Part shown: positions 1,825 to 55,900 of the stretch, piece by piece | Layout of the letters: every line of letters starts with the position of its first letter | How positions within the stretch are numbered: position 1 is the stretch's first letter | DNA from: Botryllus schlosseri | Lineage: Eukaryota | DNA length: 64,000 nt | Assembly: GCA_051294905.1 (NCBI GenBank) | Contig: CM119379.1 | Coordinates: forward strand, 15,686,001-15,750,000 | Direction of reading: 5' to 3' | Notes under the pieces: model-generated | Databases searched by the model: none | Told to the model about the DNA's origin: nothing | The model's input: only the letters and a program-made list of their open reading frames with translations | Program-made: the position numbers and the translations under genes

Positions 1825-4717
1825 CACTGTGCTGCGTTTGCAAACTAGTTTTCAAAGGTAAAAGATGTTTTAACTGTTTTTGGATCAGTGTTTCGCGCTG
1901 AACTAAAAAATGCAACCAATTTTTCTCAATTAGGTCAAGTTTTTTCTCCACGGCATATTCAATTATGCTAGCTTTTGGTCATTATTCTACCTACACAAAG
2001 AAACTAATTTCTGTGGTAGCTCGATTGATTATGCGTGTTGTAAATTTTTACAATATGGTATTTTTATTTGAATTCAAGGTTTTTGCCATGACAACCGTTT
2101 TAAATACTTCTAAAATATAATAACACAGTTGAAATAAAGGCAATTACAACTAACCAACAAATCATAATTTTGTTCAATGGCGCTCAACCTAACAGAAGAA
2201 GGTATATAGGTTGATATGTTACACAATAGACACGTAAACACTTCTAACATCACAAATGTGTTTTAAATGCGAAATCCTTGCCAACATCAGTGTGGGAAGT
2301 GTGAAATGAAGACGAAGCATTCAAAATAGCTTAACAAAGAAAGTGTTGTGCGGAACATGATGATAAATTAAACTGATACTAATGCTGATATTCTGACGAT
2401 AAATACAATAACAATATATGATGTAAATGATTTATTCTGACAATAAGCATTAATGTTATTCACGCGAAAAGAACCGTGTGAACGTTAATGTCGCAGTATT
2501 TTATTCGGCATGGTTCATAAAAGAAAAACATGCGCAAAGAATAAATACAGTCGCGACTAAGGTCACCTCAAATATATACATTGTATATATTTGGATCAAT
2601 ACCCGCCATTTACGGTGGAGGGGAAAAGAATTTAATTGAACATATAAATAAATAGGCGAATCACATACATGAAATGCAATATTATTTCGGGACAAAGGAC
2701 AGAAGAGGACGGGGCCAGTTCGCCAGAAGAACATGAAACATAGATAAAGACACCCCCACCAAAAACAACACAACACATGGTGGTGGGGGCCTACAGACAA
2801 CAAAAATAAGGGGCGAACTGGCGAGATCCGACTGCAGGCATTAAAAATATAACTATTGTGGTAAAAATCTAAGTCTTCTGTTACACAGAAAGTTTGGGAA
2901 CTCCTCCCCCTAGCAATTGGGCACCATACTGCAAATTAACTTAATTAAACAAAAGCATACTAAAATGACCCTTTCTTGTTAATATGGGGAGGAGTCCGTG
3001 AGTCAAGCCGGTTACCATGTGCCTGCAGTCGAACCCCGTGATGGCTAGTGGCAATTCATTCCAAGGATAAAAACACACAGGCACTCAGAGTAAGTGATGT
3101 TATTCACACAACTCTCGAATATTGATAATAATGATGATTACAAATGCGAAATCGAGCAGCCAATCAGTAATTGTCTCTCGCCGGTTTCTTGCTTCGCGTT
3201 GACCAACTCGCATCGCGGCAATTATTTGCAGATTAAGGGCGATTTGGACGGCATTGGTGCATTTCCTGATTTACGTTCGCGACAGGGATATCTAGTTCTT
3301 GTTCTAGATATCTCTGGTTCGCGAAGCATTTCGGGGGTACATCGGTCGATTCGTAAATTCAATTTGCATGTCGACGGCCGCCAACACATACTAATTGAAT
3401 TACATGTTGACGGCCGCACAAATGTCCTTCTACAGCAGCAGGTTGGCCACCCCTGGGTTAGAATTAATTCCACTTCCGGGCGCATGCCGCGATCTTATCA
3501 ATAGAAATTCAGTGTTTACCTAATGCCTAATAGTTTATTATTCGATATTGTTGTTCTCGATACGAGTACATCCAGCAATCAAGTGTACCGGAATGTAGAA
3601 GGTTCCCTGTTCAAACGAATCGAATAAAATCAGAATTTGCGCCACCCAGAATCTTGTGATGCATCAATATTTTACAATGGCATATATAGCATGGCCTACT
3701 GCTTCAAAGATTTCCTTCTATGTTTGGAGTTATGTGGATCTCTCTCTTTAAGCACCAACGGTAATCTGCAAACATTTTAAGTCCCTCTATCCTTGATCTG
3801 GCGAAAGTCTTGGTGGAATATCTAATTGTTATTCGCTGTAATCACCACAGTTGACTGGAAAAGTAATCCTAATGAGAAGTCAGAGAGCGCATTTTCACAG
3901 ACATCAGGGTCAGGGCTCCAGAGGATTGAAAGCTTTCAAGCAGCCCTTTGACCTGTGCTTGATAATCAGGGCTTCTATGCTTTTCGGGAAAGTTTAAAAT
4001 GACTACTCGATAAGCTGCCCATGGTCATTTTTCTACTGCACCCATGTGTGCAGTGTAACCTTCGTCTTTGATTAGTTCACAGATTTGTGCCCTATGCCCA
4101 AAGGTGATAATAATCCTGAAACCTCTTTACAGTATACTATAGGACAGTGGTTCTCAAACTTTTTTAGACACGATCCCCTTTTTGATAGTGAAAAATTTCG
4201 CGCCCCTTCTCGTGATATTACGAAATATTAAAGAGAGAAATCAGATTGCTAGCAATCGCAATGGGCATTTGATGGCATTGAAGGTTATGGCTATTGAGGA
4301 GAGAATTCTCAAATATGAAATTCGGACAATAGACAATAGACAATAGATATACCATGAGCATGAGCTGGACGTAAATCGGGCGAAGCGTGAAAAATTTCAG
4401 TTAACAGTGGCTTCGCGCCCCCCTTCAGATGCTTTCGCGTCCCCCACTTTAAGAACCACAGCTATAGGGAATGGTCTTCGTCATAATTGAAATATTTTCT
4501 TAACTTTTCATCAAATCATCATCGCTAAATTCATTTTATGACGTCACAAATCTCAATCGCATAACGCTGAAGACTGCAGTTTTCGAAAATTCAAATGCAA
4601 TTTGGCAAAAATCTAGACCTGATTGAAGTAAACGGATAACAGTTTTGGATTCAGCATCAAAAAGTACACTAAGAACCGTCAATAATTTAGTAACCTTAAA
4701 ATCGACGCAGCACAGTG
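1825..4717 (-). mobile_element. Fossil Chapaev-like (CMC group) DNA transposon
   Basis: 13-bp TIR CACTGTGCTGCGT, TAA on both flanks. A degenerate transposase lies on the minus strand at about 3700-4021 (…SH*DYFPVNCGDYSE…FHQDF…MFADYRWCLKRE…HRRKS). The two flanks rejoin into a tRNA-SINE head. The superfamily name rests on motif recall. Confidence 0.7.
4145..4461 (+). mobile_element. hAT-type MITE (CAGTGGTTCTCAAAC family)
   Basis: TIRs CAGTGGTTCT/AGAACCACAG; 8-bp TSD ctatagga/ctataggg. Related reverse copies at about 430-646 and 62877-63181. Confidence 0.8.
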
Positions 4718-6374
4718 TAATCCACGACTGCAACACCAATGGGTTGCGGTTTCGAGTTCGACCGGGGTCGACTCTAGAATTCCTACCTAAGTGTTGGCGG
4801 TTTATCGAGGTTTTAGAAGGATTTGTCCTCCTTTTTGAAAATTTGTCCTCGCATCGCCGGCCATCCGACAGTCGACGAGCATGTCCACATTCAAGTCGAA
4901 ATACAAGCAATTTATTGCTTTTTTCTTCACTATCTTCTATTACTTTACGCAATCTAGCATTTACATATCATGTCGTAATCTAGCAGTCCATGGCGTGTTC
5001 AAAGGTTGTATGCTAAAACAGGTCTAAAACTAAAAAAGTCAGAGTCCACTTTTCCAGATTAGGACACGCCATGGACTGCTAGATTACGATATGATATGTA
5101 AAGGCTAGATTGCGAAACATCAGTTTCAAACTTTATGATGAGCCATATATAATGTGATGAAATATTTCATATGGGCAACCCGCTACCTAAATTATATTCA
5201 CCGATACTTTCGTGAAGTCTGGTCACACCATATCCACTGTGTGCGAAGCGCGAGGAAAATTCTGGGCTTTATATTCAACTTTTATGAAAATTAAATGTTG
5301 ATACACCGTGAAAACACCCCCGAAATTCATCAGTCTATCTTCCTGATTGGAGGATCAGACTACTTCTACTTGACAAACTGAAAATAGCGAAAAGTAAGTA
5401 AGTAGATCACAAAATATTACGAAGTAGAAGTAGCAGTTTAGCAAAAATAAGATCAACTCGAGTAAGTACCAGAAGTAGAGGAAAACTACTTGAGTACTTC
5501 GAAAAAGTTGAAGTACTTCGTTACTGTCCACCGCTGCTCATTACCAACCGACGTAAATTCAAGTCAGTCTTTTCGCTCGAAAAATTGGCATTAACCGACA
5601 TGCTTCAGTAAGCTCAATAATGCTGGAATGGACTCGGGAAAGGAGAACACTTTTAACAAAAGTATAGAAGTTAGTTCACCGAAATTGAAAATAGCAGATT
5701 CTGAAATATTTACTAAAAGGTGATCACTGATCATCATCACTCTGGCTGGACTCCCGAATTACCCACTTTTTACCTATAGTTCGATCTGTGGTGTTGACTA
5801 AAAAAAGGTCATTTTCCCGATTTGACTCCCGAAAAACTTTCATCTTATATTATCAGTTTTGAATAAAAAAGGTTTTTAAGATTTGACTCCCGCGTAGCCC
5901 GTCATCTATCTTTTAGTTTAGGCCAACATTTTTGGGCATATTAGGCTAAAAGGAGGACAAATTGTGAAAAAAGGGAGGACATTTCATCATTGGTTTATTA
6001 AGAATTCTGATTAGTTCAATGTACCGAAAAATGCGATACAATGAAAATATAGGGAGGTGTTGAAGCGACTTGGAGTAGTCTTTGGAATCAGACACCCACC
6101 TTGGCCTAGGCGAGGTAAAGAGGAGGCATGCACACGTACACTGAATGAAAAGTAAAAGAAGATAGTGAAGAAAAAAGCAATAAATTGCTTGTATTTCGAC
6201 TTGAATGTGGACATGCTCGTCGACTATCAGATGGCCGGCGATGGGAGGACAATTTTTCAAAAAGGAGGACAAATCCTTCTAAAATATAAGCTTCCTCGCG
6301 GTCTACCAAGAAAAGCACACCATAGAATTACTGTAATTTTGTAGTTTAAAAAACAATCGTGATGACTTCATGAC

Positions 6375-6654
6375 CAGAGATGGCCACAGTCCGGTTCAGG
6401 AGCCGGAGCCGGAGCAGGATTTCAATGATTTTTTACCAGGCCGGACTGGATCCGGATTTTGAATTTGGGGTGACGGTCGGATTTTAGCCGGATTTTTTTG
6501 CTGCAATATGATTAATTAGCATTGTTCTGGCCGGATTTTCTCGGATTCCGAACTGGACATTCACCAGCCGGATTTTTTCGGACTCTGAATTTCCAATTGC
6601 CAGCCGGATCCGGATAGATTCGGATCCCGAAATTTTGGAATCCGCCCATCTCTG
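6375..6654. mobile_element. hAT-type MITE with CCGGAT subterminal repeats
   Basis: TIR CAGAGATGG/CCATCTCTG; perfect 8-bp TSD ttcatgac. Confidence 0.85.
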
Positions 6655-7343
6655 TTCATGACTTCATTTTTCAAACGGCAGCGCCGGCTAGCGGCTATAA
6701 ATTCCATGAATTTGAGTTGGAGATACAGCCCCGTGAGATCGTGACGAAACTAAAATTTGCCAAAAAAATAGCAGAAATGAGTGAAATTTCCATAGTTCGT
6801 TATTTTCACAGTGTAAATATTTCATAGTTGTTTCCATATCATTTACGAAGGCTATGGTTATTTCTACACGCCATATTATGCCTCTTCGCTTAGAAGATTT
6901 TGAAACCTTCCAACCTCATTCTAAAGTACGATTCCGTGAATTGACTCATCCTAGGCTTCCCAGTACACTCACTGAGCTATATAAACATACCCCATACTAT
7001 TTGTTTCATAGTTTCGATTCAGGATTCAGGAACGGCTGCAGCAGAGATCCTGATATCTGGATGTGATATCCGGATTTCCGCAATGTACGATTCTGTCGTC
7101 ATAATGAAAATTATGTTGTTGACCTCGTTGCTGTGACAACTGTTACAATGCTACGATATGGAAATCGTCGTAGGTCATGCAAGTAGCAAGCCTCTGCGAT
7201 GGAGTGATTGGTTTCGTCGCCGTGTAAATGTACAGCCAGAATCTTTGATCCGGTCTGCTCATCCTTTTCTCGTTTCTTCCTTCGCCGGTGAGGACGCTCA
7301 TATTATCAACGGTAAGACTCAAGCTTTCTTGCTATCCGATCAA

Positions 7344-7665
7344 GGTAGCGTAATGGTTAAGCGTCTGGCTTCTTGATCGGTAGATCGTGGGTTCGATTCC
7401 CGACCGGGTCAGACCAAAGACCTGATTAGTAATACTGGTATCCATGGCTTCCCTGCTTGGTATATTATTATTACTGGGATAGCATGGAGGGGTGGTGCAT
7501 GACTTGGAAAGCCGTAAGGGCTATATCTGCACTTCCTTGTCCAGCGGCACATGCACATCATGCACTCATGGTATGCATATGCGCAGATCGTGTGTATGTG
7601 TATCATGAGTCGGTGTATATGCCGCAAAAACATCAAGGACAAAAATAAACCACGTCCTTTTCCTT
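7344..7665 (+). mobile_element. tRNA-derived SINE, family 1 (Meta-domain-like core, hairpin 3' part)
   Basis: A-box TAGCGTAATGG, B-box GGTTCGATTCC, then GGGTCAGACCAAAGAC…CTTCCCTGCTTG. Second copy at 19958-20307. Confidence 0.85.
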
Positions 7666-8259
7666 GATCACAACTTGGAAAAACAATTTCTCTGTGACCT
7701 CTTGGTCTTGGTGCATTGCAACTTATAGATGTGGATGATATCTAAACAACAAACGTCCACCGCAGTAAACCAGTGAAATCAAACCATACCAAATCCTAAT
7801 TCTCATTTTGCGAACAGCTACCTATAGGCTATATAATGTAAGGTATTCACTAAATGAACCGTCAAATACCGGTAGGCTGCACTTCATCATTTGACTGGGT
7901 GATTGACTTGTTTTCAAGCTAATGGACAAATTTTGCTGTAATGTTAGTACACGCGTTTTCATTTTCTTGCTTGTCTATTATGCATGCAAGTCAGAGATTT
8001 CTGGAAAACATACGTCTGGCAATCAGAACAAATTATATAATGCCAACAAGTATGTGAATATGGGATGAAACCTTTATTGTAACTTCATAACTCGGAAATG
8101 GCAAACCCATGTCGGGGCAAAACCATGACAACCGATAGCAATTTACTACACACATATCACATTTATTAGGACAATTAGATAACAATGCGCCCGGAGTGGA
8201 ATAAGCGGCAACGGCACGCGCAACGTCACGCAAACATTTGCATCTGATCACGCCAATTA

Positions 8260-8420
8260 TTGAATTATGCTGACGTCACAAAGCGATACCGGAGTTCAGA
8301 TCCAAAATAAGGCGCTTTCGCTTTACAATCAACGCAAGCAAGCGTGGCATTTGCGCAACGACGTAACCCTAGTCTGGCGTATACCAGGTCTATTTTAACA
8401 CATTGTGTCGTTTGGTAAGT
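8260..8420 (+). promoter_or_regulatory. Putative promoter / non-coding first exon of VWA-BRCT paralog 1
   Basis: Locally GC-richer segment with a CRE palindrome TGACGTCA at about 8271 and an otherwise unused GTAAGT donor at 8415, upstream of the acceptor near 9409 that precedes the ATG at 9453. Confidence 0.3.
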
Positions 8421-9452: not shown

Positions 9453-12400
9453 ATGCCAGGACAGAAGAAGATCCGCGTCAGTCGTGGTTCGGGACTAAAA
9501 AAGGATGAGATGCTACGAAGCAAGTATTTCTGCCAAGTCACCAGGAATCAGGTATATTTAGCGAATGCAAACCACAGAAATCATAATTCTCCATTCTCGG
9601 ATCTACTTTCGTTTTCTGTGTGCTTCAGATAACTTCCTTGGCATCTTCTCTGTCCTCTGCTTTCCTTTCTAAATCAAAATGTCGTTCACAGATGTTAGAT
9701 GTCGTCATGGAGATATCAGCTCCACCCAGACCGGATATTAAGCGTCCGCCTCTGCGGTACGTACTAGTGATTGACGTTAGTTCGAGCATGAAGTACAAAG
9801 TTGGTAAATCTACCGAGTCTTTATTGGATCGGGTCAAGGTACAGTGTATATAGATAACCATGTAATTAGATGTTATAGATAACTTTGCATTTCCAGGTGT
9901 TCGCGGAACTGGTGATTAGAAAAGTAGCAAATAAAGATTCGTTGGGTATAGTATCCTTTGCGAAAAATGTCAAAATCGAATTTCCAGTCACAATAATGAG
10001 CAATGACGCCAAAGTATGTTTGCCCTTCCCTTTGTGAATGATGTGAAAATGATAATGATTGGGAAAACATCTTTTATCGAAGGTACGGGCTTTGGGAGTA
10101 GTTCGGGAGCTCACAGTTCGCGGCGGCACAAATCTGGAACTTGGAATGATGACGGGACTAGAAGTGCTGAAAGAGTAGGCTTCTGTTCGTTTCAATTCTA
10201 ATTAGATTATTTGAATTTCGTCGCCTGATAAAGCAGTAGGCCTACTTCGTATGCCATCCACAGGAATGGTGGCTTCCAAGAACTGTAGACCTCCAAGAGT
10301 GTATTGCGAATGTTATTTTCCTATTTATCACTTTTTCTCCAAATTCTAGAATAGGTGACTAGCGGTATTGAACTTGAATATTCAAGTTGAAGTTGAATGT
10401 TTCAAGATTTCGTTTAATAACTCGAAAGAGTTTTCTTGTGCCCCTTATAAGTAGTTAACGGCACAAAGACAAGCATATCAACAGATATTCAAAGAAATCC
10501 ATTTGATAAATAACGATATAACAATATACTTTTAAAACAACGCTAGTCAAAGTTCACTGTACCGGTAACTATGCGGTGGTCATAGCCAGGAAAACGAATG
10601 AGATTAATGGAAATGATTTCAACGTTGTAAAACATATCGCGACAAAATTTCTTGTGTAGCTCGCAATCGGCAGAGAACAAGGACCTGATTGTAATATTCA
10701 CGGATGGAGAAGCCAACAAAGGGAGCACGGATGCCACGGAAATGATCGCGAACTATAATGAAGCTCAGGCAAAATCGGGGAACTCTGCCTGCGTTCCTAT
10801 CTCCGCATTCACGATTGGCGGATACGTACCGGCTCTGCTTGACGAGGTATTATAACAATAATAATTATCGGTGCTATTATTTTCGTCCGCTCAAGACGCA
10901 CACCTCGATGTGTAACACAAGACTCAATGCCTTGTGATGATCAAATAGTAAGCTGTTTGAATGACCAAATGCGGTCCGTCAATCTAAAAACCAGCAAGGC
11001 CTACTGCTCAGTAAAAATTTAGCCTGCATATGCTTTTTTGGAGTAATCAAGTGTGTTTTGCCGGCTTGCAGTACTTCCATGAATGGCTATTTTGTTAGAC
11101 TTCTCACATTTCTAATGGGACATGATTTACGCAAAATGACTTACATTTTACAATTTGGACTTTGAAAATTACAATGTAAGTTTCGAATAGTATATTCATA
11201 TTGAAAGGAACCTGAATATTTTCGGCTGACACTCGTCAGGGGTAATCGTCAGCAACTAGTAGAGAATTGGAAAGAACATTGTATATCAACAATCGTATCA
11301 ATCGTGGTGACGTCATATATTGTGATACGATTGTTGATATACAATGTTCTTTCCAATTCTCCGCTAGTTGCTGACGATTACCCCTGACGAGTGTCAACCG
11401 AAAATATCCGGGTTCATTACAATATGAATATAGTGTTCAATTGTATATTGAAGTTCTGTACCTCCAAGAAGCTCTTCAAATGTAAGTTTTGGGACAAAAT
11501 TCCATCCTTTTTGATTGAAATTGTAATAAGAACCATGTGAAATAGCATCAGAAACTGAATATCTTTTCGAAAATTCTGCCCATTTGTTGTGTCATTAGAC
11601 GTTATGCATTAAACTGGTACCATTTCAAGCGGTTTCTATGTGTTTTTGAAATTGATGGCATTATGTCTAAAATCGATCCGTTCATTTGCGCAAGTTTGAA
11701 TTCCGATGATGTTTTTTTTCCTTTCAGCTCTCTCAGCATTTGGGTAGCGACGCGTTCTACTGGCTTAACGAAAACGAAGAGTTCGAATCGGACATGCTGA
11801 TGCCGATTCTTCTGAGGTATCACCTTGCTTAAAAAATTCCATAGAGTTTCAAATTTGACTTTCGATCGTATTGGCAAGAGAGGAGACGCACGTCACCGAC
11901 GTTAAGATCAAAATGACATGCCTGGAAGGAGTGACTTTCGACGTGGACGCCACATACAAAACTGCGGCAATGGTCAGTTTTCGTGATCCTGAACGTGTTA
12001 TATTCATGATGTAGCTTTACACTTATTAGCATTGGCAATGGTAGTTAGTAGCAATGTGATGTGTTTTGAAGACTCGAGTGTCATCAACAAAGGTGATAGC
12101 GGTCTAGTTCAGGAAATTATTGACATTATTATTGATCAACCTTTCCAAAATGAAAAAACTTCAAGGTGTCATCAGATTTTTCGGACTCCAATTTATAAAT
12201 GTCTAATCGGGATGATAGATTGTGATTCTGGTCGTCAAGAATTCTTTTTTGCTGGTAATAGTAAAGGGGTAGCCTACGTCGGTGTTTTGGGATTCAGATA
12301 TAGGTTGTTTTCGTTGAACCTTTGGATCTGACGACAACCGCATTAATTTACAGAGTTAATAAGCTGGCATATTTACAAGTCATGAACTAGGCGATGGGGT

Positions 12401-15400
12401 GGATCATCTACTGTTTAAAAAACAAAATATTTTTTACACAATGTAATTTATTATCATCAAAAAGATGATACTTGATTTGCGCCTTGATTGAACGTGATGG
12501 GGATTCGGAGATGGGTGAAGGGCATTTGTAGAAGTGTTCTTGATTCGTGTTTGCAAAAATGTCTGGCAAGAAAAAGAGGAAATTTGCTTCATTAAACCAA
12601 ATGTCTATGTTGTTTTAAAATATAGAGCTGGATCTTGATCGAAAGATATTCCGCCACTGTTACGAATCCTTTTTAAACTGATCCGGGCAGAATGTGCTGA
12701 CTTGATAGAGCTCTTCCAATTCAGGGTTGTGACCAAGTCACACAAGGTTCCGATTCACAAGTCAATCTCACTTTTATAGTTTTCACTCGAGTCAAGTCCA
12801 GTCATTTTCGATTCACCATCGAGTCAAGTCACGGAGTAGAGTGTCGAGTCCGGGGCATAGTGTTTCGACTCGAGTCCGAGTCCGACTGTTCAGTTTCGAG
12901 TTGATGTGATGTGAAACCCACTTTTTACAACTCTGCTCGGTGATATCGAACGTTTCGTATTCATAATATACTAATCTTCCTCACTTTTTACAGTTTCTGG
13001 TAGTGATAGACGAAATGATAATACAATTGAATAGTATATTCATATTGAAATGAACCCGAATATTTTCGGCTGACACTCGTCACGGGTAATCGTCAGCAAC
13101 TAGTAGAGAATTGGAAAAAACATTGTATATCAACAATCGTATCACAAAATATGACGTCACCAGCATGAAATTTCGTGAATGAGAACTCCTTTTGTGGACA
13201 GAGTTTTGGTTGGTGCATTTTGATAAAACTCGACTCTAAGGCACACAAATGGAATTGTGAAGGGCGTCGCCCATGCTGGTGACGTAATATTTTGTGATAC
13301 GATTGTTGATATACAATGTTCTTTCCAATTCTCTACGAGTTGCTGACGATTACCCCTGACGAGTGTCAGCCGAAAATATTGGGGTTCATTTCAATATAAA
13401 TATACTATTCAAATGTATATTGAAGTTCTGTACCTCCAAGAAGCTTTTGAAATGATAATACTGTGATAACTTTGCCATTTTTCAAAATTACAATGAAATG
13501 CCTGTCTTGTTAGACCCTGCCTCGAGCCATGTGACTTGGTCATAGTCATGCGCAATGACTCAAGTACAAGTCGAATTGACTCGAGGCGAGTCTTGACTCG
13601 TGTCACTACAACCCTGTTCCAATTCAATGCCGCATATTCGCCAATCTAATCCTTCATTCAGGATCTTACGAAGGATGAGCTCAACTACTTCATACATTCA
13701 TTTCCGCAAGCCACAATGAAACAGATCCCTCTAAAGTTCAACTTGCCTCCAGAATCATCGGTAGTGTATGCTTCTTTTCGCATTGATCTAAATCGGCATT
13801 GTCTGTCGCCGGGCTTGTCTATTTCAGGCTGTTCGATATCCGATCTTGTTTGTATCGTGCTATCCGTAAATTTTGACTGCTTCTGATAGTATTTTAAAAA
13901 AAGGTTAGGTTATCTTGTAGTTAGGTTATCTTGTAGTTAACAAATTCACCTACTACACTACTGAATGATAAGCAAGTGTGTCCAAATCGGTCCTTGTTGC
14001 TACTCGAATAGAGTACATCGTAAAATTCTACTCAATTACAAGTAGATTTCAAATCTACTTTGAGTGGAAGTGGAAATTGAAAGGTCTGAAAGCTGCCCGA
14101 GTAGTTTGAGAAAGTAGATTTGGTGAAAAGGTCACATACTTTTAACGGTTTATCTGAGGTGGCTATTTTCAAAATTGCAAAAAAAAAAAACAGCTTTGCG
14201 ACTAAAGTAAAATGACTAACGACACTATCAATAGGTACGACCTCCCAAAATATATTCAGTTACAGCAGGAGTGGCCAACCCGTGGCCTGCGAGATAATTG
14301 TCAAAACTGATTGTATTATCAAAAAATGTATTGTCCGGGTAACTTATTGTGAACTTGCAAGGCCAACTGAAAATTTGATTATCGTGGCCACGAAATTTGG
14401 GATGTTGACGACTAAAATATTAGTTTTGGCCAGGGTTGTGACCAAGTCACGAGGTTCCGAGTCACAATTCAATCTCGCCTCTATAGTTTTGGCTCGAGTC
14501 ATGTCGAGTCATTTTCAATTCACCACCGAGTCAAGCCCGAATCCAAGTCGGCTGGTAGAGGGTCGAGTCCGAGTCACAGTGTTGTGACTCGAGTCCAAGT
14601 CATTACGTTCAGTTCTCAGTTCAATCAAGTTCCACCCAGTTTTTCAACTCTGCTCGAGTGATATAGAATGGCTCGCATTCGTAATATAGTAATTTTTCTC
14701 GGTGTTAACACACTCCAAATAGGCCTCGGGACTGATGACGAAATACCAATAATATGTTAACTTTGCTATTCTTCAAAGTTACAATGAAATGTCTGTCTTG
14801 GCCACCCTCGTCTCGAGTCATATGACTTGGTTTGAGTCAATCACAATGACAGTGCGCAAAAAATTCTACGCTCTTCACACGGTTTGTTGTCAGTTGATGA
14901 ATGATAGGCGCATGTTGACCGAAACCCTCGATATCGATATGTCCAGGTGCCAAATAGCCCCAAATAGTCCTTGCAAAGTAAGCCCAGCGGTATACAGAGG
15001 CTCTTCGCAATATATGCAAGTAACAATATTCATTTATTAACTTTGAAAACTTTTTGCCTTTCGCTCGACTAGGTCTTATATGCGCATTGGGTTTTCATGA
15101 CATAAATGTTATTGATTTTGAAGTGTAGTAAAATAATTCTTGTTTTCGCCGTCACCAAATCCTGTTCGCTCCTATCAGACGACTAAAAAAGTTCATTAGC
15201 ACTCAGGCGGTCCGCGACATGATTCGTAAGTTGCATGTGACTCTCTGGCCGAAAAGGTTGGCGGCCTCTGAGTTACAGTGAGGCAGGGGCTCTATTTGAT
15301 TCGAGTGAGAATCCTATTTTCTATGCGTCTTTCACAGGCTCTAGACCAGCGCCCAGTGCTGGATATTGAAATCACTTACATCGACGATAAAATGATGAAC

Positions 15401-34500: not shown

Positions 34501-37500
34501 TCGAATCAATTTTTATTTTACCACCGAGTCAGAGTCATGGTATTACGACTCGAGTCTTAGTCCAAGTCATTGCGTTGACTGCTCAGTTTCGAGTTAAAGT
34601 CTAGTTAAAACCACTTTTTATAACTCTGTTTGGTAATATTGAATGTTTCGCATTTAAAATATACTAATTTTCCTCACTTCCAACAGTTCAAGTCGCATTT
34701 TCAAGTACCAGTACTGATAGGCGAAATACAGACAGTGTAGCTACTTTATCATTCTTCGAAATTACAACGAAATGTTGGCCTTGGCCGTCTGTGACTTGAG
34801 TCAAGTCGAGTCATCAGAAAATTGTGACTCGAGTCGAGTCATTACAACCCTGCATCAATTTCTAAATCATTCGTGCTGTTACATCGTCATGGTCACGATA
34901 ATATTGACGTGAAATAGCCATCGTATCGTAGCCTTTCTGGAATGCTAACATGTTTCTGCAGGATATCATCGATAAACCGATCGTGAACGTAAAACTTTCC
35001 TACCTCGACAATATAATGAGGAAAAGAGAGCTAACAGACACAGTGACGCTCTCCTTGCCACCGCCGACGGAAGTGGACGGCCCGACAAAAAGACAAGGTC
35101 AGTGACTAGGGCCTAGCAAGCTACGCGATGACCACCCTCCATGCTCTATTCAGGTTCTTTCTTGCCCGATATCACGGCCTTTTGCGTGACGAACAACGTT
35201 GCCGATACCACAAAGACGGCGGCACAGACTTCGCTGGCGGCTGTCGCAGATTCTAAATGCAGAGTCGTGACCATGGCGGCCATTTCAAGGATAGTGAATT
35301 CGAACAAGTAAGCCGCTTTTTATGCTGATATTAGCACAGGTTATTGGAGATTTTACCTCCACATAAATTAACGAATTCTGTGTATCTGAAGAATATACAA
35401 AGCAATATCTTGCATCTAACCATAAAGTTAGGGTTTGTCATGGATAATACTTATCTGATTGTCACCGTGGATATTACCTTGTAAGATAATATGTTATGGC
35501 TAAGCTTTTCAAAGAAGCTTCTCACACTGCATTTCAGTAATGGAACTTTCGTTCACTAACGAAGTATGTAGCAATCATATTAATATTTCGTCCTTATGGG
35601 TAGATACTATACTATATACTGGCTGTGTTCAAAACATGTTGAAAATAACTTTCACCTAGCTTAGCCAATTATAACTCCAAATGTAAGACCAGCATACACA
35701 ATTTCATACATTGCTATGAAAATGTTGTGAATAAATTTCTTCGGGAAGTACCAACGGAGGTTCAAGCATTACCGATTTAGGATACTTGAGTTTGATGTGA
35801 CCAAAGTTTGAATTTTATGCCTGAATGCGGTATCTGGTTTGGTATTTTTAGGTTGGTTTATTGTCTCGCTTAGTTTTGCTATGTTAGCCCTGTTGGCCGT
35901 ACCACGTCAGTACTAAGACCAGTGTTGTAACCAAGCTACAAGTTCCCATGTCACAAGTCAATTCTACTTTATAGTTTTGACTCGAGTCAAGTCTAGTCAT
36001 TTTCTATTCACCAACGAGTCAAGTCCAAGTATGTGTTCAACGGTTCGAGTCCAAGTCATTGTGTTTGCTGTTCATTTTCGTGTTCAAATTTGTTCAACTT
36101 ACTTTTTGACTTACTGCTTGGGTGATATTGAATCCCTCGCAATCATAATATAGGCATTTTCCTCCCTTTGCTCAGTTTCTGGCCCTATTTTGCGAATGCC
36201 GGTACTGATAGACGAAATACCAATAGCAAGGTAGCTTACAACACTTCTAAGTTGCAACAGAATGCTTGTCTTGGCCGTCCGAAACTCAAGTCATATGACT
36301 TGATCGAGTCACACACAACGACTCGAATGCAAGTCGAGTCGATACACAAAATGCTACAGGTCGAGTCACCAAATATCGCGACTCGAGTCAAGTCATTGCT
36401 GCCCTGACCAAGACTAGTTCGGAAATTCAGATTCATTAAATATTTACATGCAGGGGCTCACAACACATAATTCCAACAAAGATCGCGCGTGAGACCATCT
36501 TAGAGATCAACCGAATTAACAACCAGTACAAGTCAGTGATACAGGAGAGCAGCAAGCAGTCGCAGCAGCTTAGAGAGGACATCGGAAATTGGATAGCGCG
36601 AGTTAACTTTAGCGGAACCTTCAAAAAGTGAGATTAGCGAGAGAGCATAGGCAAAGGCGGGCCACGTCATAGGTCGATTGTGTTCAGTAAGAGAAGGTTG
36701 GGAAGGCTGTTTGCAATGCAATCATCTCTGGAGAACGAGATGCCGGCCGCCAGAGGGGTTTTCGATCCACAGCAAAGGCAACCGTATCTACATCCTGAAT
36801 TGGAAGAACAGCTACATCGCATTGATACGGTGAATTGGCAAGCTTGTTGTTATTTGTGGTATTCATGGTGTTCTTCGACTACAGTGGTCATTTACATCAG
36901 GCCGATATTCAATATTCTGATTCCATATCTGCAAACTTGTAACACAGCCTACTTTTAGGCCTTTGTAAGACCAGAGGGGTTTAAATCTGTAGAAAAGGCA
37001 ACCGTATCTAAATCCTCAGAACAGCTACATCACATTCATATGGTGAATTGGCAAGCATGTAATAATCACAGTATGCAGTGTGGTGATCAGAAGGGTTGCT
37101 CAAAAATAACTTTTTTCTTCAAATTTTACTTGCTTAGTAATTCAATTGTCAGGTTGCCTAAAAAATGCTAAGCACCAAATTTGGATCAATTCTGACCCGT
37201 AGAAGCCGTGCAATCAGGGAAATTACTCAGAAATCCCTATTTCTAATTGTAATTGAATAGTGCAACGCACAACACATTCATATTCGCAATTTATTCACTC
37301 CAAGCTTTTCAACTGACACTCATCGTGAGCGGTCGTCAGTAAATACAGAGATTGCAATTTGAAATTTAAAGATGAAATAGACAGTGTGACGTTAGAACGG
37401 TATAATAAAAACAATGAGAGAATTCACAAAACGATAGCGTTAAGCGCAGATGCAATTAGCCCAATACAAATTGGCTATAATATATAGCCAGATTCGCAGC

Positions 37501-49900: not shown

Positions 49901-52900
49901 TTCCAAGTCACTGTCTGGTATTAATGATTTTCACCAATGCTAATTGCAGATTAATGAGTACAGATTATGGGCTTACCAATAGGGTGCTATCGCTATAACT
50001 TCCCAAAGGTGCAACCGAATAAACGAAGTAGTACACCATCCTTGGAATGGCTTCAGACGTGATAGCTATCGTAAATGCCTGGAAGACATGAATAATGACA
50101 GAGATTAATATTCCTGACCGGTGAATGGACAATGTACAAAGCATGCTTACATTAGTGACTACCGAGGCGCCAGCTAGAAATTCCAGTAAGTCGTACCACA
50201 CCCCGATACCTGCACACTTCTGAGACAGCGGTCTCCTGCATTAGAGAGAAAATGATGAGCGTCAGATATCATAGCAGCATGTTCCATTTTAACATTGCGG
50301 TTTTGGGGCAGTCTTAAAGTGATTTAGTCACTGCAGAAGGTAGTTCAGCGCTTTGTGAAATAACATGTTCCTATTAGCAACTGGGTCTGTGAAGCACAAT
50401 TGAGCGTAAATCGAGTAATGTACATCTCACCTAAGCTCGCAAATGAATTTGTTCGCGTCCAGTCTGATCTCGATGATGTTGTTCAGAAGTGCGAAAAAGG
50501 GGGCGAGGGGAAAGGCGCACACAAAAAGTGTAATAAATCCAAATTGGATCACTGTAAACATACGGAATAAGTTGAAATATCCATAAGCAAGTTTCTATCT
50601 CTTGGACTGATTAAGCTTAGGCACTTATTCTGAATTTTCACAAATTCCACCCTACCCATTTCGAGGTATTCGTAAAACAGTCCCAGCTCATCAAACTGGC
50701 CGAGATCGTAATCTTGCTCCCATCTCGTGTACTCATTGTCAGGCTTTTCGTGCGACTGCTTGTTGGATTTGTATTGTCTGCAAATAAAATGATGTAATTA
50801 CAAACGCTCATACAAAGACACACAAGCTGATTTTATTCCATTCAGGAATGCGATAACTTTTGATTTTCGTCAATTCATTACAAGTGTTAGGATTGAGATG
50901 AAATTGGAAACATGAGCCTGGGTACTAGGGTTGTAACCAAGTCACCAGGCTACGAGTCTAAAGTCGAACTCACTTTTATAGTTTTGATTCGAGTCAAGTC
51001 AAGTCATTTTCAATTCACCACCGAGTCAAGTCCGAGTCCAACTCAACGAGCAGAGGATCGAGTCAGAGTCATGGTATTATGACTCGAGTCCAAGTCATTG
51101 CGTTGACTGCTCAGTTCCCAGTTAAAGTCTTGTTTAACCCACTTTTTATAACTCTGTTAGCCTGTTCGGTGATATCGAACGGTTCACGTTAGTAATATTA
51201 ATTTTTCTCACTTTAAACAGTTTCTGGTCGCATTTTCAAGTACTACTACCAATATAGGAAATACCAATAGCTTGGTTACTTCACTATTCTTCAAAATTAC
51301 AATGAAATGTCGGTCTTGGCCGCCTGAATCTCGATACATACAACTTGGTCCGAGTCATGTGCAATGACTCAAGTCCAAGTCGAGTCATTACACAGATTGA
51401 CTCGAATCATCAGAAAATCGCGACTCGAGTCATTACAACCCTGACCTGTACCAATATAGGGAGTTCTGCAAATTCCATATCAACATATAATGCACCACCT
51501 TCTTCCATTACAGAATCATTTTTCACTAAATTTGACTCACAAAGTACCAGTATTACAAAATACCTATTTTTATACTAACTATGATTTTGTGCATGGAGAA
51601 CGCATATTTCAATGTCCTAAAAGTCAATATACCTGTATTTATTAAGAATCCATGGCAAAATAATCTCATACGTATTGTTCCAAAGCTGCTTTCCCAGCAT
51701 TATAATCATGAGTTGAAGCGAAAGTTCGTACATGCACCCACCAGGATCGCACTAGAAAATGCAACAGAAATATCAACTCTGCTTTTACCAGCACATTTTA
51801 GCTTCTCTTACTTGCTCCCATCTCCACTCGCCGAGGTAGGTGTAGTTTCCGGGCCTTCCGGCAATAGTTGTTTTGAAAAAGGCGACGTAGAATAGGTAGG
51901 AATAGTAGTTGACAAATTGGAAGCAGAACATTTTAAAGGTAAAACTGTCGTCGAATTCCTGTTGCGTTCTTGGCAGCTCTTAACACAAATAAAATAATTT
52001 TGACTTGTTATTGTCTGCCGAGTGGGCCTACTAACTTTTGAATTAACCATATTACTGACGTTTGCAACTGATGGTTGGCCGGTCGAAAAGGCTTTAGTGA
52101 CCAGCTTAACAATATAGAGTTATAACTTGTTACAATGCAGAAGTAGACGATGCAAAGAGATGCTTAAAGCACAAATAACATAATAATATGTAAGGAAAAT
52201 TTGGAACATCAAAGCCTTCAGAGAGGCAGAGACTTTATTTTAAACCAGGACTGATAGATGATATTATGTGAGCATAATTGAACCCGGAGAGTATAGATTC
52301 GATGAAACCACTGAAGTAGTGGAAGTGTTTGATGCTTAAAACCATGTATATCTCTTAATTTGATAACCCAACCCTGTATGCATGATTATCATGTATTTGT
52401 ACATGCATTGCCAAAGTAGATGTATTGGGATATTCAGACAGGGCACAGAATAAAGAGACAACCATGAAATCTATGACACAATAACAGTTCCTCACACCAT
52501 TTTCACAAACATCTAAATTTCTGAAAACCAAAACATTTCAGCACGTAACTTACCCTTATGGGTCAGCCAAATCGCCACATACTGGTACAACTGAAATCGA
52601 CAAGCACAAAGTAAGGTGTATGTTCATTGTTCAATCACGCGGATAGTCTTCAAAATTACCTTATTCAGAATCATGATGACGACCAGAGAAAGACACGATG
52701 CTGTAATGGTGGTGAGCATTTGAGGCGTAGCAAACTGTCCAATGATACCCACATCTTGTAAAGCGGTCAAGTCTACAGATACAGCGAAGACTGCCTTAAT
52801 CGCCAAACGATAGACAATAACCGCAAACACGGCCGCAAAGATGAGTATTATCTGTCGAGATAAAAGTTTGCGTGCACATGTTAAGAGCTTCTTGGAGGTA

Positions 52901-55900
52901 CAGAACTTCAATATACTATTCAATTGTACACATGTAGGAAAACTCTTGCTTGCCTCAGCTCAAAGGCATCAAAAACATTCAAACGAATAGATATATTTTG
53001 GTAATAACATTGTTTTCGCTACTACAGAAAAGAAACATCTGTTACCCAAAACAAGACTGTTGTTAAGGAAAATGTGATTCTCCAATATTTCTGTTTCATT
53101 CCAATGTACGGCTCCTTTTGTAACGTCACGGGATTAACTCTTTCTTTTTTAACCTCCGCTTCATACTCTGGCCGAACTACATCCGCCTCTTCATCGTAAT
53201 TTACCAGGTCCCAGTCGTAAGAGAGCTTAAACTGCTTTCTCTTCCAAAATTCCAAGAACAACGTCGCTAAATTGAATTCGGTGAATTTATTACCAGCCTA
53301 CTCTATACGAAAAGATAAGGAGTTTCACATACCCCACATCGACATAAACACGGCAAAAATTATCGTCGAAGTGTTATCGAAGAGATGTGTGATCTGTAAA
53401 GAAATATTCTCTTCAGAGCATCTTTGCAAAAAGATTGAATACATCGCTGTAGTGTACCAGAGACGACAGAAGCAATGTTATTGTAGGGTTACCACATTTT
53501 GAAATCAGGAAAGGATGACACTTTCACCAAATCATAAAAGTTAGTTGACCGAAATTGAAAACAACTCATTTTGTATTATCTACTGGAAATCTTGTTTTGA
53601 CTAAAAAAAGGTCATCGCTTTGACTCAACTTCCGATTTACCCACTTTTTACGTTAATTTTGCGGTGTTGACTGAAAAAAAGGTCAATACTTTTATTTGAC
53701 TCCCGAATGACCTCCTCGAACGTTCGTATTACCTATTTCACGTCATTTATACCGATTTTCAATTGACTCTGTCCATTATCCTAGTTGTAAAGACTGTAAA
53801 GGAGGACAAATTGCAAAAAATGAAAACATTTAGCCGTCCTCGCAGGACATTTTCTATTTCCTGAAAAATGAGGACAAATCCTAAAGGACGTATGGTAACC
53901 CTAGCTTATTGGCACCGAAATTTCGCCTGTTTGAGATAATCGACAAGTAACAAAATAGTTCTCAAATGATCCCATTCGGATTAACGATGCCAAACAACAT
54001 CATGTATGATAAATCAGAAAAGATGCTCACCACCGCAGCTGTACACGACGTGTTTAATCTCCAGTAAGTACAGTCTATGTCACACAGTGGGCACATGATC
54101 TCATTACCAGCGTAGGTAGGAGCGTTCTCATCACAGACTTCGTCACTGAACAACAAGACAGTGCAGTAGAATATCTGGATCAAACCGAGGTATACCTCAT
54201 TCTCTTTACCAAATGATATGACAGAAAATAACGAATTGAAGATCATAATACTGTGCATAATAGCTCAATATGCAACCGGACAGAAAATTATAGAATTCAA
54301 TTCAAACATGCAGATTTCAAATATTCATGCTGTTAAACATTCGAATCATTCTATGATTTTTGTTCACCAAGCACAAGTAAACAACACAAGAAGCTGCTAC
54401 TATGACTCAGTGGTATTGTTATGATTATGATACATTCAATTCCGGTTTGTCTTATTGACCGAATGCGAATTGTCCTAGCGAAATGGGATTGAGTCGATTT
54501 TCAAGCAGAAATGCATATTCAATCACTAAATAGTTACTGTATGCCAGAAGACAGGTGCTGGCAGTAAGCTGCAACAGAAATTATCAAAACTTCACATAAA
54601 CTGATGATACTGAAGAATTACCAAAACGTTTTTTGGCATGTAGCAATAAAAGCCAGACATGTTCAATTTGCGTTTACTTACACCGTTATTTCACCATTTA
54701 GTGTTACAATACTGTAGATCATCCAAAGCAAGCCCACACCGGCAGGGTATAGTAGCATGTAAGTGTAAAATCCCAGCCATGCAAAATATACGGCAATTTT
54801 GTCACCATAATATTTTCTGTCACAGAATGTGAAAAGAAACAATTAGATATATTAAAATTGAATAAAAGAAACAGTCATTGTCGTATATGATATATACCAG
54901 TGGTCGGGAACCTTTTTTGTCCGAAGAGCCATATTAGCCCTATTTTTTCCATCTCAATTCCCAAAGAGCCATACATGACGATAAACTGTTACGTCCCAAT
55001 TGAAAATTCGTGACATCATCATAGCACTAATTTGAACTCACTATAATACTTGGGATTCCTCGTATGCGCCATATTTTCTCTGTAAAAACTGATATTTATT
55101 GTTCGAAAATAAAGCTCGAAACGAGAGGTAAGGCACAGACGGGCCAAGCCTCACCATTGATAACACAATTCATCGTATAAGTAGCTTAGAATTTATTATA
55201 ACTGATATTAATCGAATGTGACAGTCTGACTGATTCTGAAAATCTAAATACTTAACGACTTTTCAATTCCCAAAGTATTCGGCGGTTGCGCTACACGCAT
55301 ACATTTTATCGCCGGCACTACACAGAGCTATACTTACCAATCAAGAACGTGGGGATAGCTATGGCGTTGTTTGTAATTCGAGTTTTTAATTGTGAATGTC
55401 ACATCCACAACAGTTCATTTCGCGCCGTAGATCAGCAAGACAATTTGTATTTGAAAACTGCGTTTTGAAATGGGCGCCCCCATGTTTGCTATGCTCTTTG
55501 ATTAATCAGCGCATCGCACAATTCAAGATTTCGAGTCGGGTACATAGAATTCGCGAGAGACATTGGCCGCCGGTATGACAGCTATTTAAATTTGATCATT
55601 TTCAAAAGAGGGGGTCCGAGCCCCTCAGCCTGAAGACAGCGTTGTCTTTTACCTCTCAAATACATGTTTATACTGCCACGATAATAATTATATTGGCCGT
55701 TATGAAAATTTACCAACAAGTCGCTGCAATGTTGATCAATTCAGTACAACAATACATATTCGTCAAAGAGCCATATCTTATACCCAAAAGAGCCATATAT
55801 GGCTCGCGAGCCATAGATTCCCGACCACTGATATATACATACAAGCAGAGAATGAAAATTATAATAATAATTAGACTGAATAACAGACTGCACCATAGGC

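What the first reader, a model, noticed from the sequence alone, without database searches (positions are those of the whole stretch)
11173..13461. Family of palindromic, hammerhead-bearing, Penelope-derived retroelements (retrozyme-like foldbacks) in introns
Seen: two related elements (11184-11478 and 13025-13448) are each an inverted pair of arms plus an unpaired 3' tail of about 30-35 nt. They are flanked by direct repeats of different lengths (11 and 13 bp), unlike the fixed 8-bp TSDs of the surrounding DNA MITEs. Each arm holds a 34-nt motif (11210-11243 -, 11380-11413 +, 13054-13087 -, 13352-13385 +). Its consensus ACCC-CUGACGA-G(UGUCAGC)C-GAA-AAUAUU-C-GGGU fits a type I minimal hammerhead: core CUGANGA/GAAA, a 4-bp stem I, a palindrome in place of stem III, and a UUC cleavage triplet. 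Knowledge: Penelope-like elements carry minimal hammerheads with palindromic stem III that act as dimers, and they often integrate as inverted repeats with a short tail. Inference: this is a non-autonomous PLE family that would be misannotated as a DNA MITE.
Basis: partly seen in the sequence, partly recalled or inferred. Interest (0 to 1): 0.82.

Follow-up and report, generated by a model that had tools for sequence, protein, structure and literature searches.

The report
Dead inverted Penelope retroelement insertions
The two "palindromic elements" are old, dead, head-to-head truncated insertions of an abundant Penelope-like jumping gene, which is ordinary for this class; the one unusual point is that the family's small hammerhead RNA motif builds its second helix by pairing with a strand upstream instead of folding into a hairpin.

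Summary
In detail: arms, one-sided 30-40 nt tail, 11- and 13-bp duplications and four 34-nt motifs sit at the stated coordinates.

- **Origin.** The arms are the last 115-280 nt of an autonomous Penelope-like element (PLE). [quoted passage not shown]
- **Structure.** Head-to-head pairs with a tail on one arm and 10-14 bp duplications are the family's usual insertion form, as published for PLEs.
- **Not a separate family.** Every copy has its own centre. The junctions of E1 and E2 are essentially unique, and motif spacing in pairs runs from 62 to 3,224 nt. They are not retrozyme-like either.
- **The motif.** It is the PLE's hammerhead, 2-70 nt upstream of the start codon in nine lineages. The core is conserved, helix I covaries and helix III is always palindromic. 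Helix II is a 6-bp pseudoknot with an upstream box (97.6% paired, 6/6 compensatory pairs). Rfam misses it.
- **Local state.** All four local copies carry disabling substitutions.
- **Untested.** Self-cleavage is unproven; RNA reads showed no ends at the predicted site.

Earlier follow-ups in this scan reported the same pseudoknotted hammerhead elsewhere in this genome.

The parts
11173..11183 (.). E1 target-site duplication, left copy (AATGTAAGTTT)
11184..11300 (-). E1 left arm: 5'-truncated PLE 3' end without tail (unit positions 2538-2652, 97.4% to a present-day unit)
11305..11478 (+). E1 right arm: 5'-truncated PLE 3' end with tail (unit 2520-2692, 93.6%). The PLE start codon is at 11424-11426. 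The tail, about 11439-11478, is the first codons of the PLE ORF.
11479..11489 (.). E1 target-site duplication, right copy
11210..11253 (-). E1 left hammerhead relic, including the upstream helix II box (11248-11253). Carries G1.1>A at 11213.
11370..11413 (+). E1 right hammerhead relic: box 11370-11375, stem I 11380-11383 with 11410-11413, core 11384-11390, helix II strand 11393-11398, helix III 11403-11408. Mutated at 11397 and 11408.
13012..13024 (.). E2 target-site duplication, left copy (GAAATGATAATAC)
13025..13269 (-). E2 left arm: PLE 3' end without tail. It reaches into the last codons of the nuclease ORF (unit 2380-2661, with a 33-nt internal deletion). This extra length is the 104-nt 'loop'.
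13272..13448 (+). E2 right arm with tail (unit 2515 to about 2692; tail about 13419-13448)
13449..13461 (.). E2 target-site duplication, right copy
13054..13097 (-). E2 left hammerhead relic, with core C3>G at 13083
13342..13385 (+). E2 right hammerhead relic, with cleavage-site C17>G at 13381
52883..52928 (-). Third fragment of the same family: only the last 46 nt (unit 2646-2691)

Best explanation
E1 and E2 are two independent, old, dead insertions of one autonomous Penelope-like retrotransposon. They are 3-9% diverged from present-day copies.

Each insertion was made in one event as a head-to-head pair of 5'-truncated copies, with the 3' ends pointing outward.
- Shown: one arm starts at the distal end point (unit 2688-2692, 'tail'). 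The other starts about 35-40 nt further in (unit 2652-2661).
- Shown: the pair is flanked by a 10-14 bp duplication.
- Shown: the two cDNA-derived arms meet at a point that differs in every insertion.
- Inferred, following Frangieh et al. 2024: the nuclease cuts both target strands with a 10-14 bp stagger. Both 3' ends prime reverse transcription inside the PLE RNA at two neighbouring start sites. The two cDNAs are then joined by template switching at microhomology.

The 34-nt motif is the element's own hammerhead.
- In an intact unit it lies about 105 nt after the stop codon and 14 nt before the next start codon.
- Its helix II is a pseudoknot. G10.1-C11.1 is stacked on six pairs between the strand that follows G10.1 and a box 4 nt upstream of stem I.
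- Helix III is a palindrome that can only pair between two RNA molecules.
- Inferred: in tandem or read-through transcripts it would cut just upstream of the ORF and define a short 5' leader.

In E1 and E2 the motif has no function. Each copy is mutated, and the two copies of an element lie on opposite strands.
For: PLE origin:
- The arms align to the 3' end of a 2,692-bp tandem unit with an 860-codon open frame.
- That frame hits RVT_1.
- The GIY-YIG match is sub-threshold in this copy (E 0.021) but above the cut-off in homologues of 42-59% identity.

Insertion anatomy:
- All 10 complete pairs have one tailed and one tail-less arm.
- Duplications of 10-14 bp flank 8 pairs.
- Among exact motif copies listed on contig 1 there are 13 close -/+ pairs and no close +/- pairs.
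- This matches published PLE structure (PMC8557442) and the two internal reverse-transcription start sites (PMC11167929).

Independent events:
- 17 foldbacks all have different centres.
- Hits to the E1 and E2 centres mostly stop at the junction.

Hammerhead:
- The same architecture lies upstream of the ATG in nine lineages of 41-64% protein identity, and in other families of this genome (873 pattern hits against 1 in the control).
- 92.3% of cells pair, against 69.4% in shuffles (0/500) and 21-36% in slid controls.
- Helix II is 97.6% paired with 6/6 pairs changed on both sides. Helix I has 3/4 such pairs.
- C3-G8 changes to U3-A8 in two lineages.
Against: - Rfam finds no hammerhead in the window or in full-length units, even at E<=10.
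- No RNA ends pile up at the predicted cleavage site. The one raw-read run is single-cell RNA-seq, and its reads come mostly from truncated copies inside other transcripts.
- Nested minimum-free-energy folding prefers competing hairpins in this family (-10.5 kcal/mol).
- PLE hammerheads cleave poorly in vitro (PMC4209133).
- All inserted copies keep 30-70 nt downstream of the predicted cut. The template RNA was therefore uncut at that site.
- The inner ends of the two arms are often within 13-40 nt of each other. Two fully independent priming events do not obviously predict this.
- A few loci align across the E1 centre at 82-93% identity and could not be inspected.
Confidence: 0.87

Rival explanations
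1. One reading: a distinct non-autonomous, retrozyme-like PLE derivative that propagates as a foldback unit using the autonomous element's enzyme.
For: - There are many foldbacks of about 290 bp (3,144 first-look candidates).
- Read depth steps up about 170 nt from the 3' end.
- Four loci align across the E1 centre at 82-93% identity.
Against: - Every inspected copy has its own centre.
- Most hits stop at the E1 or E2 junction.
- Motif spacing in pairs is continuous from 62 to 3,224 nt.
- The same structure occurs in 99%-identical pairs with over 1 kb of ORF.
- The excess of short copies can be explained by turn-arounds near the 8-bp palindrome TGACGTCA, which many centres contain.
- There are no same-sense tandem hammerheads, which retrozymes require (PMC7229834).
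Confidence: 0.06
2. A DNA foldback or MITE whose terminal inverted repeats merely resemble a PLE end.
For: - The arms are long and inverted, with flanking direct repeats.
- Rfam gives weak microRNA-precursor-like hits to the hairpin.
Against: - The arms are collinear with the PLE 3' UTR and ORF start or end.
- The ends are asymmetric by 30-40 nt.
- Duplications vary from 10 to 14 bp.
- The inner boundary varies from copy to copy.
Confidence: 0.02
3. The conserved motif is a structured RNA that looks like a hammerhead but does not self-cleave in vivo. It might instead be a binding or initiation signal for the reverse transcriptase, or a translation element next to the start codon.
For: - No ends are seen at the cut site.
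- Templates of all insertions were uncut at this site.
- Cleavage was not needed for insertion of an Anolis PLE in vitro, and no reads ended at its site (PMC11167929).
- Rfam does not match.
Against: - All canonical core positions are kept across lineages.
- Position 17 is never G in the 14 aligned lineages.
- C3-G8 changes only together to U3-A8.
- The three helices sit exactly where a hammerhead needs them.
Confidence: 0.25

Closest known systems
Canonical endonuclease-positive Penelope-like elements (Penelope/Poseidon type) and their insertion anatomy (Craig et al. 2021, PMC8557442; Frangieh et al. 2024, PMC11167929)
   Same: [quoted passage not shown]
- Partial tandems.
- Frequent 5' truncation.
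- An adjacent inverted 5'-truncated copy.
- A 30-40 bp tail at one end only.
- A hammerhead next to the ORF start.
- The tail lies inside the ORF start, as in the Anolis element.
   Different: Nothing essential differs for E1 and E2. I did not place the family in a named clade by phylogeny.
Minimal hammerheads of metazoan PLEs (Cervera & de la Pena 2014, PMC4209133; Lunse et al. 2017, which I could not read)
   Same: - Type I order of the parts.
- A short stem I of 4-7 bp.
- A conserved G10.1-C11.1 pair.
- A palindromic stem III that implies action as a dimer.
- The U3-A8 core variant.
   Different: Described PLE hammerheads have a long hairpin helix II (6-8 bp). Here only one pair closes the segment. 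The other six pairs are made with a box upstream of stem I, so the structure is a pseudoknot.
Non-circularly permuted hammerheads (Eckert et al. 2023, PMC10085705)
   Same: - A pseudoknotted hammerhead core.
- One side of stem I is joined to one side of stem II by a linker of about 3-5 nt.
- The structure is not matched by Rfam's hammerhead models.
   Different: Those variants permute three intact blocks (types SGC, CSG and GCS). Here the block order is the ordinary type I (CGS), and only the 5' strand of stem II has been moved.
Metazoan non-LTR retrozymes (Cervera & de la Pena 2020, PMC7229834; Li et al. 2026 preprint, 10.64898/2026.07.22.740005)
   Same: - They carry hammerheads.
- They are proposed to derive from PLE terminal repeats.
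- They are non-coding.
   Different: Retrozymes are head-to-tail tandem repeats of 150-450 bp with same-sense canonical hammerheads, expressed as circular RNA. E1 and E2 are single inverted pairs with opposite-strand, mutated motifs.
L1 twin priming (Ostertag & Kazazian 2001; from my own knowledge)
   Same: Both target strands prime reverse transcription, which gives inverted, truncated insertions flanked by a duplication.
   Different: In L1 it is an occasional by-product that yields an inversion within one copy. In this PLE, head-to-head pairs with two distinct start sites are the usual product.

Membership tests
Penelope-like element (endonuclease-positive) | Reverse transcriptase domain in a single long ORF | tested here: met
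   An 860-codon open frame in several copies. RVT_1 hit at E 7.8e-9, above the cut-off.
Penelope-like element (endonuclease-positive) | C-terminal GIY-YIG nuclease | tested here: inconclusive
   This copy scores 15.6 bits against a cut-off of 22.6, on the right residues (VVYEYRCHCDCGYVGRT). Homologues P0012 and P0087 score 27.5 and 25.9 bits at the same position.
Penelope-like element (endonuclease-positive) | Partial tandems, inverted 5'-truncated copies and a one-sided 30-40 bp tail | tested here: met
   A tandem of 2,692-bp units in L046. All 10 complete pairs have one tailed and one tail-less arm. The feature is described in PMC8557442.
Penelope-like element (endonuclease-positive) | Target-site duplications of variable length | tested here: met
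   10-14 bp in 8 insertions.
Hammerhead ribozyme | Conserved core (C3 U4 G5 A6 N7 G8 A9, G12 A13 A14, A15.1-U16.1, H17) | tested here: met
   These are the invariant or near-invariant columns in 14 lineages. C3-G8 changes together to U3-A8 in two lineages. Position 17 is never G. None of the four copies in this window meets it.
Hammerhead ribozyme | Three helices around the core, supported by covariation | tested here: met
   Helix I: 3 of 4 pairs changed on both sides. Helix II: 6 of 6, 97.6% paired, but formed as a pseudoknot. Helix III: palindromic in 92.9% of cells.
Hammerhead ribozyme | Match to Rfam hammerhead covariance models | tested here: not met
   No hit at the gathering score or at E<=10 in the window or in full-length units. 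This is expected, because the models require a nested helix II.
Hammerhead ribozyme | Site-specific self-cleavage | tested here: inconclusive
   No pile-up of read ends at L046 5842/5843. The only raw-read run is single-cell RNA-seq with almost no coverage of the ORF. A bench assay is needed.
Metazoan non-LTR retrozyme | Head-to-tail tandem repeats of 150-450 bp, each with a same-sense type I hammerhead | tested here: not met
   E1 and E2 are single inverted pairs. Their motifs lie on opposite strands. Features taken from PMC7229834.
Metazoan non-LTR retrozyme | Expression as small circular RNA | tested here: inconclusive
   The reads were laid on 1.1 kb of the autonomous unit in L046, not on E1 or E2. 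No back-joint was seen at the hammerhead site there. The data type is unsuitable for detecting circles.
Non-autonomous family with a master copy | Copies share the same internal junction | tested here: not met
   17 of 17 centres differ. Most genome hits stop at the E1 or E2 junction.
DNA MITE / foldback transposon | Symmetric termini and a fixed-length duplication | tested here: not met
   The ends differ by the 30-40 nt tail. Duplications are 10-14 bp.

The most novel reading that the evidence does not exclude
This clade of PLEs, found in this genome and in marine metagenome contigs, carries a functional dimeric hammerhead of an undescribed topology. It is a type I ribozyme in which the 5' strand of helix II has moved upstream of stem I. 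Helix II is therefore a pseudoknot tethered to stem I by a 3-5 nt linker. The ribozyme sits 2-70 nt upstream of the start codon and sets the 5' end of the translated RNA.
Probability: 0.35. Interest if true: 0.6.

Novelty: new variant of a known kind. Interest (0 to 1): 0.4.

Why it matters
The two elements themselves are ordinary. They are textbook Penelope-type insertion relics, and showing that removes a supposed new family of hammerhead-bearing foldback elements.

There are two practical lessons.
- Such inverted pairs, with TIR-like arms and flanking repeats, are easily annotated as DNA MITEs or hairpin-RNA genes. The one-sided tail and the variable duplication are what identify them.
- The family's hammerhead escapes Rfam because its helix II is not nested. 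Genome surveys based on covariance models or hairpin descriptors will therefore miss thousands of copies. There are 2,539 exact copies in this genome alone.

If the pseudoknotted form cleaves, it adds a further rearrangement to the hammerhead permutations described in 2023. It would also tie the ribozyme to the start of the PLE reading frame.

Tried and rejected
- **Rfam.** At gathering and permissive thresholds on the window and on full-length units there were only spurious microRNA-like hits to the hairpins.
- **Hairpin helix II.** I tried to read the 9-nt segment after the CUGANGA box as a hairpin, as an intermolecular palindrome, or as pairing with the CUGA box. None of these is conserved across lineages. 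I also rejected an alternative register that uses the upstream CUGACGA as the core, because it leaves 6 unpaired bases at the base of helix II.
- **RNA reads.** There were no ends at the cleavage site and no circular joint, and the ORF body is almost unread. This is not evidence of absence.
- **Nested folding and cofolding.** These prefer competing hairpins and cannot model the pseudoknot.
- **More genomic copies.** I could not inspect four loci that align across the E1 centre, and I could not make a genome-wide table of junctions.
- **Literature.** Lunse et al. 2017 is not held. Prior description of the pseudoknotted form cannot be excluded, although three full-text searches found none.
- **Not done.** I did not establish the host species or confirm the intronic position.
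Full report
**Observation**

- E1 (11184-11478) has arms 11185-11300 and 11323-11438 that are 92% complementary. The right arm continues about 40 nt further.
- E2 (13025-13448) has arms of 147 nt that are 95% complementary, with 104 nt between them and a one-sided extension of about 30 nt.
- The flanking direct repeats are 11 bp (11173-11183 and 11479-11489) and 13 bp (13012-13024 and 13449-13461).
- The 34-nt motif lies at the four stated positions.

**What the arms are**

A whole-genome search with E1 found thousands of candidates (3,144 in the first look). These include many copies of one arm alone at 94-96% identity.

Upstream of such single arms the sequence is coding. It ends in a GIY-YIG-like block. 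A protein search found copies with open frames of up to 860 codons, head-to-head pairs, and a tandem array with a 2,692-bp period.

In that array (L046) the open frames run 3132-5711 and 5824-8403.

- The product hits RVT_1.
- Its C-terminal part gives a sub-threshold GIY-YIG match.
- Homologues of 42-59% identity pass the cut-off at the same position.
- Relatives in metagenome contigs carry the same domain set.

This is therefore an autonomous, endonuclease-positive Penelope-like element (PLE).

In the tandem unit the order of parts is as follows.

1. Stop codon.
2. About 105 nt of untranslated sequence.
3. The motif.
4. 11 nt.
5. ATG.

The tail of E1 and E2 is the first 15-18 codons of the ORF.

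**How the insertions are built**

I aligned one genomic unit to all held loci. Recent copies (about 99% identical) are nearly always head-to-head pairs. In all 10 complete pairs, one arm ends at unit position 2688-2692 and the other at 2652-2661.

- E1 fits this rule: 2652 on the left arm and 2692 on the right.
- E2 fits it too: 2661 on the left and about 2692 on the right.
- The 104-nt 'loop' of E2 is simply its longer left arm, which reaches unit position 2380 in the last codons of the nuclease ORF.

Duplications in eight insertions are 10-14 bp.

The 44-nt master motif occurs exactly 2,539 times in the genome. Among the places listed for contig 1 there are 13 close -/+ pairs and no close +/- pairs. 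The spacings run from 62 to 3,224 nt.

This is the published PLE anatomy: strong 5' truncation, partial tandems, an adjacent inverted truncated copy, and a 30-40 bp tail at one end (PMC8557442). In the Anolis element the tail was shown to be the stretch between two internal reverse-transcription start sites. That protein cuts and extends both target strands (PMC11167929).

**Family or independent events?**

- An alignment of 17 foldbacks similar in size to E1 shows a different centre in every one.
- Searches with the E1 and E2 centres return hits that mostly stop at the junction. Four loci align across E1's centre at 82-93% identity with different lengths. One of them, L011, has a different centre by inspection.
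- I therefore find no sign of amplification from a master foldback.

The apparent family of about 290-bp foldbacks probably reflects a preferred turn-around near the 8-bp palindrome TGACGTCA, about 170 nt from the 3' end. Many centres contain this palindrome, and read depth steps up there. This last point is inference.

**The motif**

Rfam finds no hammerhead anywhere, even at E<=10. The 9-nt segment between CUGACGA and GAAA cannot form a hairpin.

Yet the same architecture lies 2-70 nt upstream of the start codon in nine lineages with 41-64% protein identity. It is also present in other PLE families of this genome. A pattern that excludes our own family gave 873 matches, against 1 for the reversed control.

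Earlier follow-up reports of this scan, on other pieces of the same genome, suggested that helix II pairs with an upstream box. I tested this on an alignment of 14 lineages.

| Element | Cells paired | Pairs changed on both sides |
|---|---|---|
| Helix II (box with inner six bases) | 97.6% | 6 of 6 |
| Helix I | 81.8% | 3 of 4 |
| Helix III (palindrome) | 92.9% | 2 of 3 |
| G10.1-C11.1 | 100% | 1 of 1 (the one departure, U-G, is an alignment artefact in lineage L057) |
| Whole structure | 92.3% | 12 of 14 |

- Examples of box and strand pairs are GCUGAC/GUCAGC, ACUAAC/GUUAGU, UCUAGC/GCUAGA, UCCAGC/GCUGGA and UCAAGG/CCUUGA.
- In shuffles the whole structure pairs in 69.4% of cells (0 of 500 shuffles reach the observed value). 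With slid partners it pairs in 21-36%.
- The invariant columns are the hammerhead core.
- C3-G8 changes together to U3-A8 in two lineages, a variant known from PLEs (PMC4209133).

The motif is therefore a conserved hammerhead-like RNA with type I order, a pseudoknotted helix II and a dimer-type helix III.

The geometry is plausible by analogy, which is inference on my part. A single nucleotide crosses the deep groove of a 6-bp helix, as in classical pseudoknots. A 3-5 nt linker joins the top of helix II to the far end of stem I, much as in the type-SGC hammerheads (PMC10085705). Those permute whole blocks, which is a different rearrangement.

I found no description of this form in three full-text searches.

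**Activity**

Activity is not shown.

- Raw reads of a single-cell RNA run gave no pile-up of ends at the predicted cut.
- About two thirds of the laid reads run on into unrelated sequence. They therefore come from truncated copies inside other transcripts. The ORF body is almost uncovered.
- All inserted copies retain 30-70 nt downstream of the cut site, so the template RNAs were uncut there. This agrees with the Anolis result that cleavage is not needed for insertion (PMC11167929).
- Nested folding of this family's motif prefers competing hairpins.

**The local copies**

All four motifs in the window differ from the master at positions that matter.

- A broken 1.1-2.1 pair (E1 left).
- A helix II mismatch plus a broken 15.1-16.1 pair (E1 right).
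- C3>G in the core (E2 left).
- G at position 17 (E2 right).

The two motifs of each element lie on opposite strands. No transcript can therefore bring two sense copies together, and a retrozyme-like life cycle (PMC7229834) is not available to them.

**Verdict**

E1 and E2 are ordinary dead PLE insertions. The 'non-autonomous, retrozyme-like family' does not. The hammerhead is real as a conserved structure, and it is unusual in how helix II is made. Other follow-ups in this scan have already noted that feature in this genome.

Noticed in passing
window 37262-37330 (-) and 37569-37745 (-): Relic of a different PLE family. It has a nuclease remnant (46% identity over 59 aa to our ORF) followed by a decayed copy of the same hammerhead architecture, with box ACUGAC pairing with GUCAGU and stem I ending in GAGUG.
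   Followed up: partly
loci L032, L041/L042, L043, L044, L047; window E1: In many pairs the inner truncation points of the two arms lie within 13-40 nt of each other (1626/1612, 1177/1164, 1450/1464, 1413/1374, 1635/1608, 2538/2520). Others are very unequal (L039: 2543/1570). Near-symmetry would fit two reverse transcriptases of one dimeric particle working for the same time, but this is speculation.
   Followed up: partly
L046 5741-5748 (unit about 2522-2529); window 11308-11315 and 13280-13287: An 8-bp palindrome, TGACGTCA, lies about 170 nt from the 3' end. Many foldback centres fall in or next to it, and read depth rises about threefold there. It may be a hotspot for the turn-around.
   Followed up: partly
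flanks of E1, L032, L039, L043: Several duplications begin with AAAT or AAAA, which matches the bases that follow the tail in the tandem unit (AAATATT). This suggests microhomology between target and template, or a nuclease preference.
   Followed up: no
start of the ORF in L046, L049-L054, L057: The first 20-30 codons (consensus around LKFCTTK.LFKYFRKRY) and their nucleotides are strongly conserved between lineages of 41-64% identity. The tail ends inside this stretch, so it may hold the reverse-transcription start signal.
   Followed up: no
window 12786-12876 and 13556-13604: Repeats rich in GAGTCAAGTC form weak inverted and direct repeats on both sides of E2. E2 may therefore sit inside another foldback-like repeat.
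   Followed up: no
L086 1480-1680: Truncated 3' ends of two different PLE families lie head-to-tail 110 nt apart. This is an example of PLEs inserting next to each other.
   Followed up: no
L033 4772-5863 (-): A 363-aa ORF with a DUF4371 domain (E 3.6e-19) lies next to a PLE fragment. It is probably part of another transposon.
   Followed up: no
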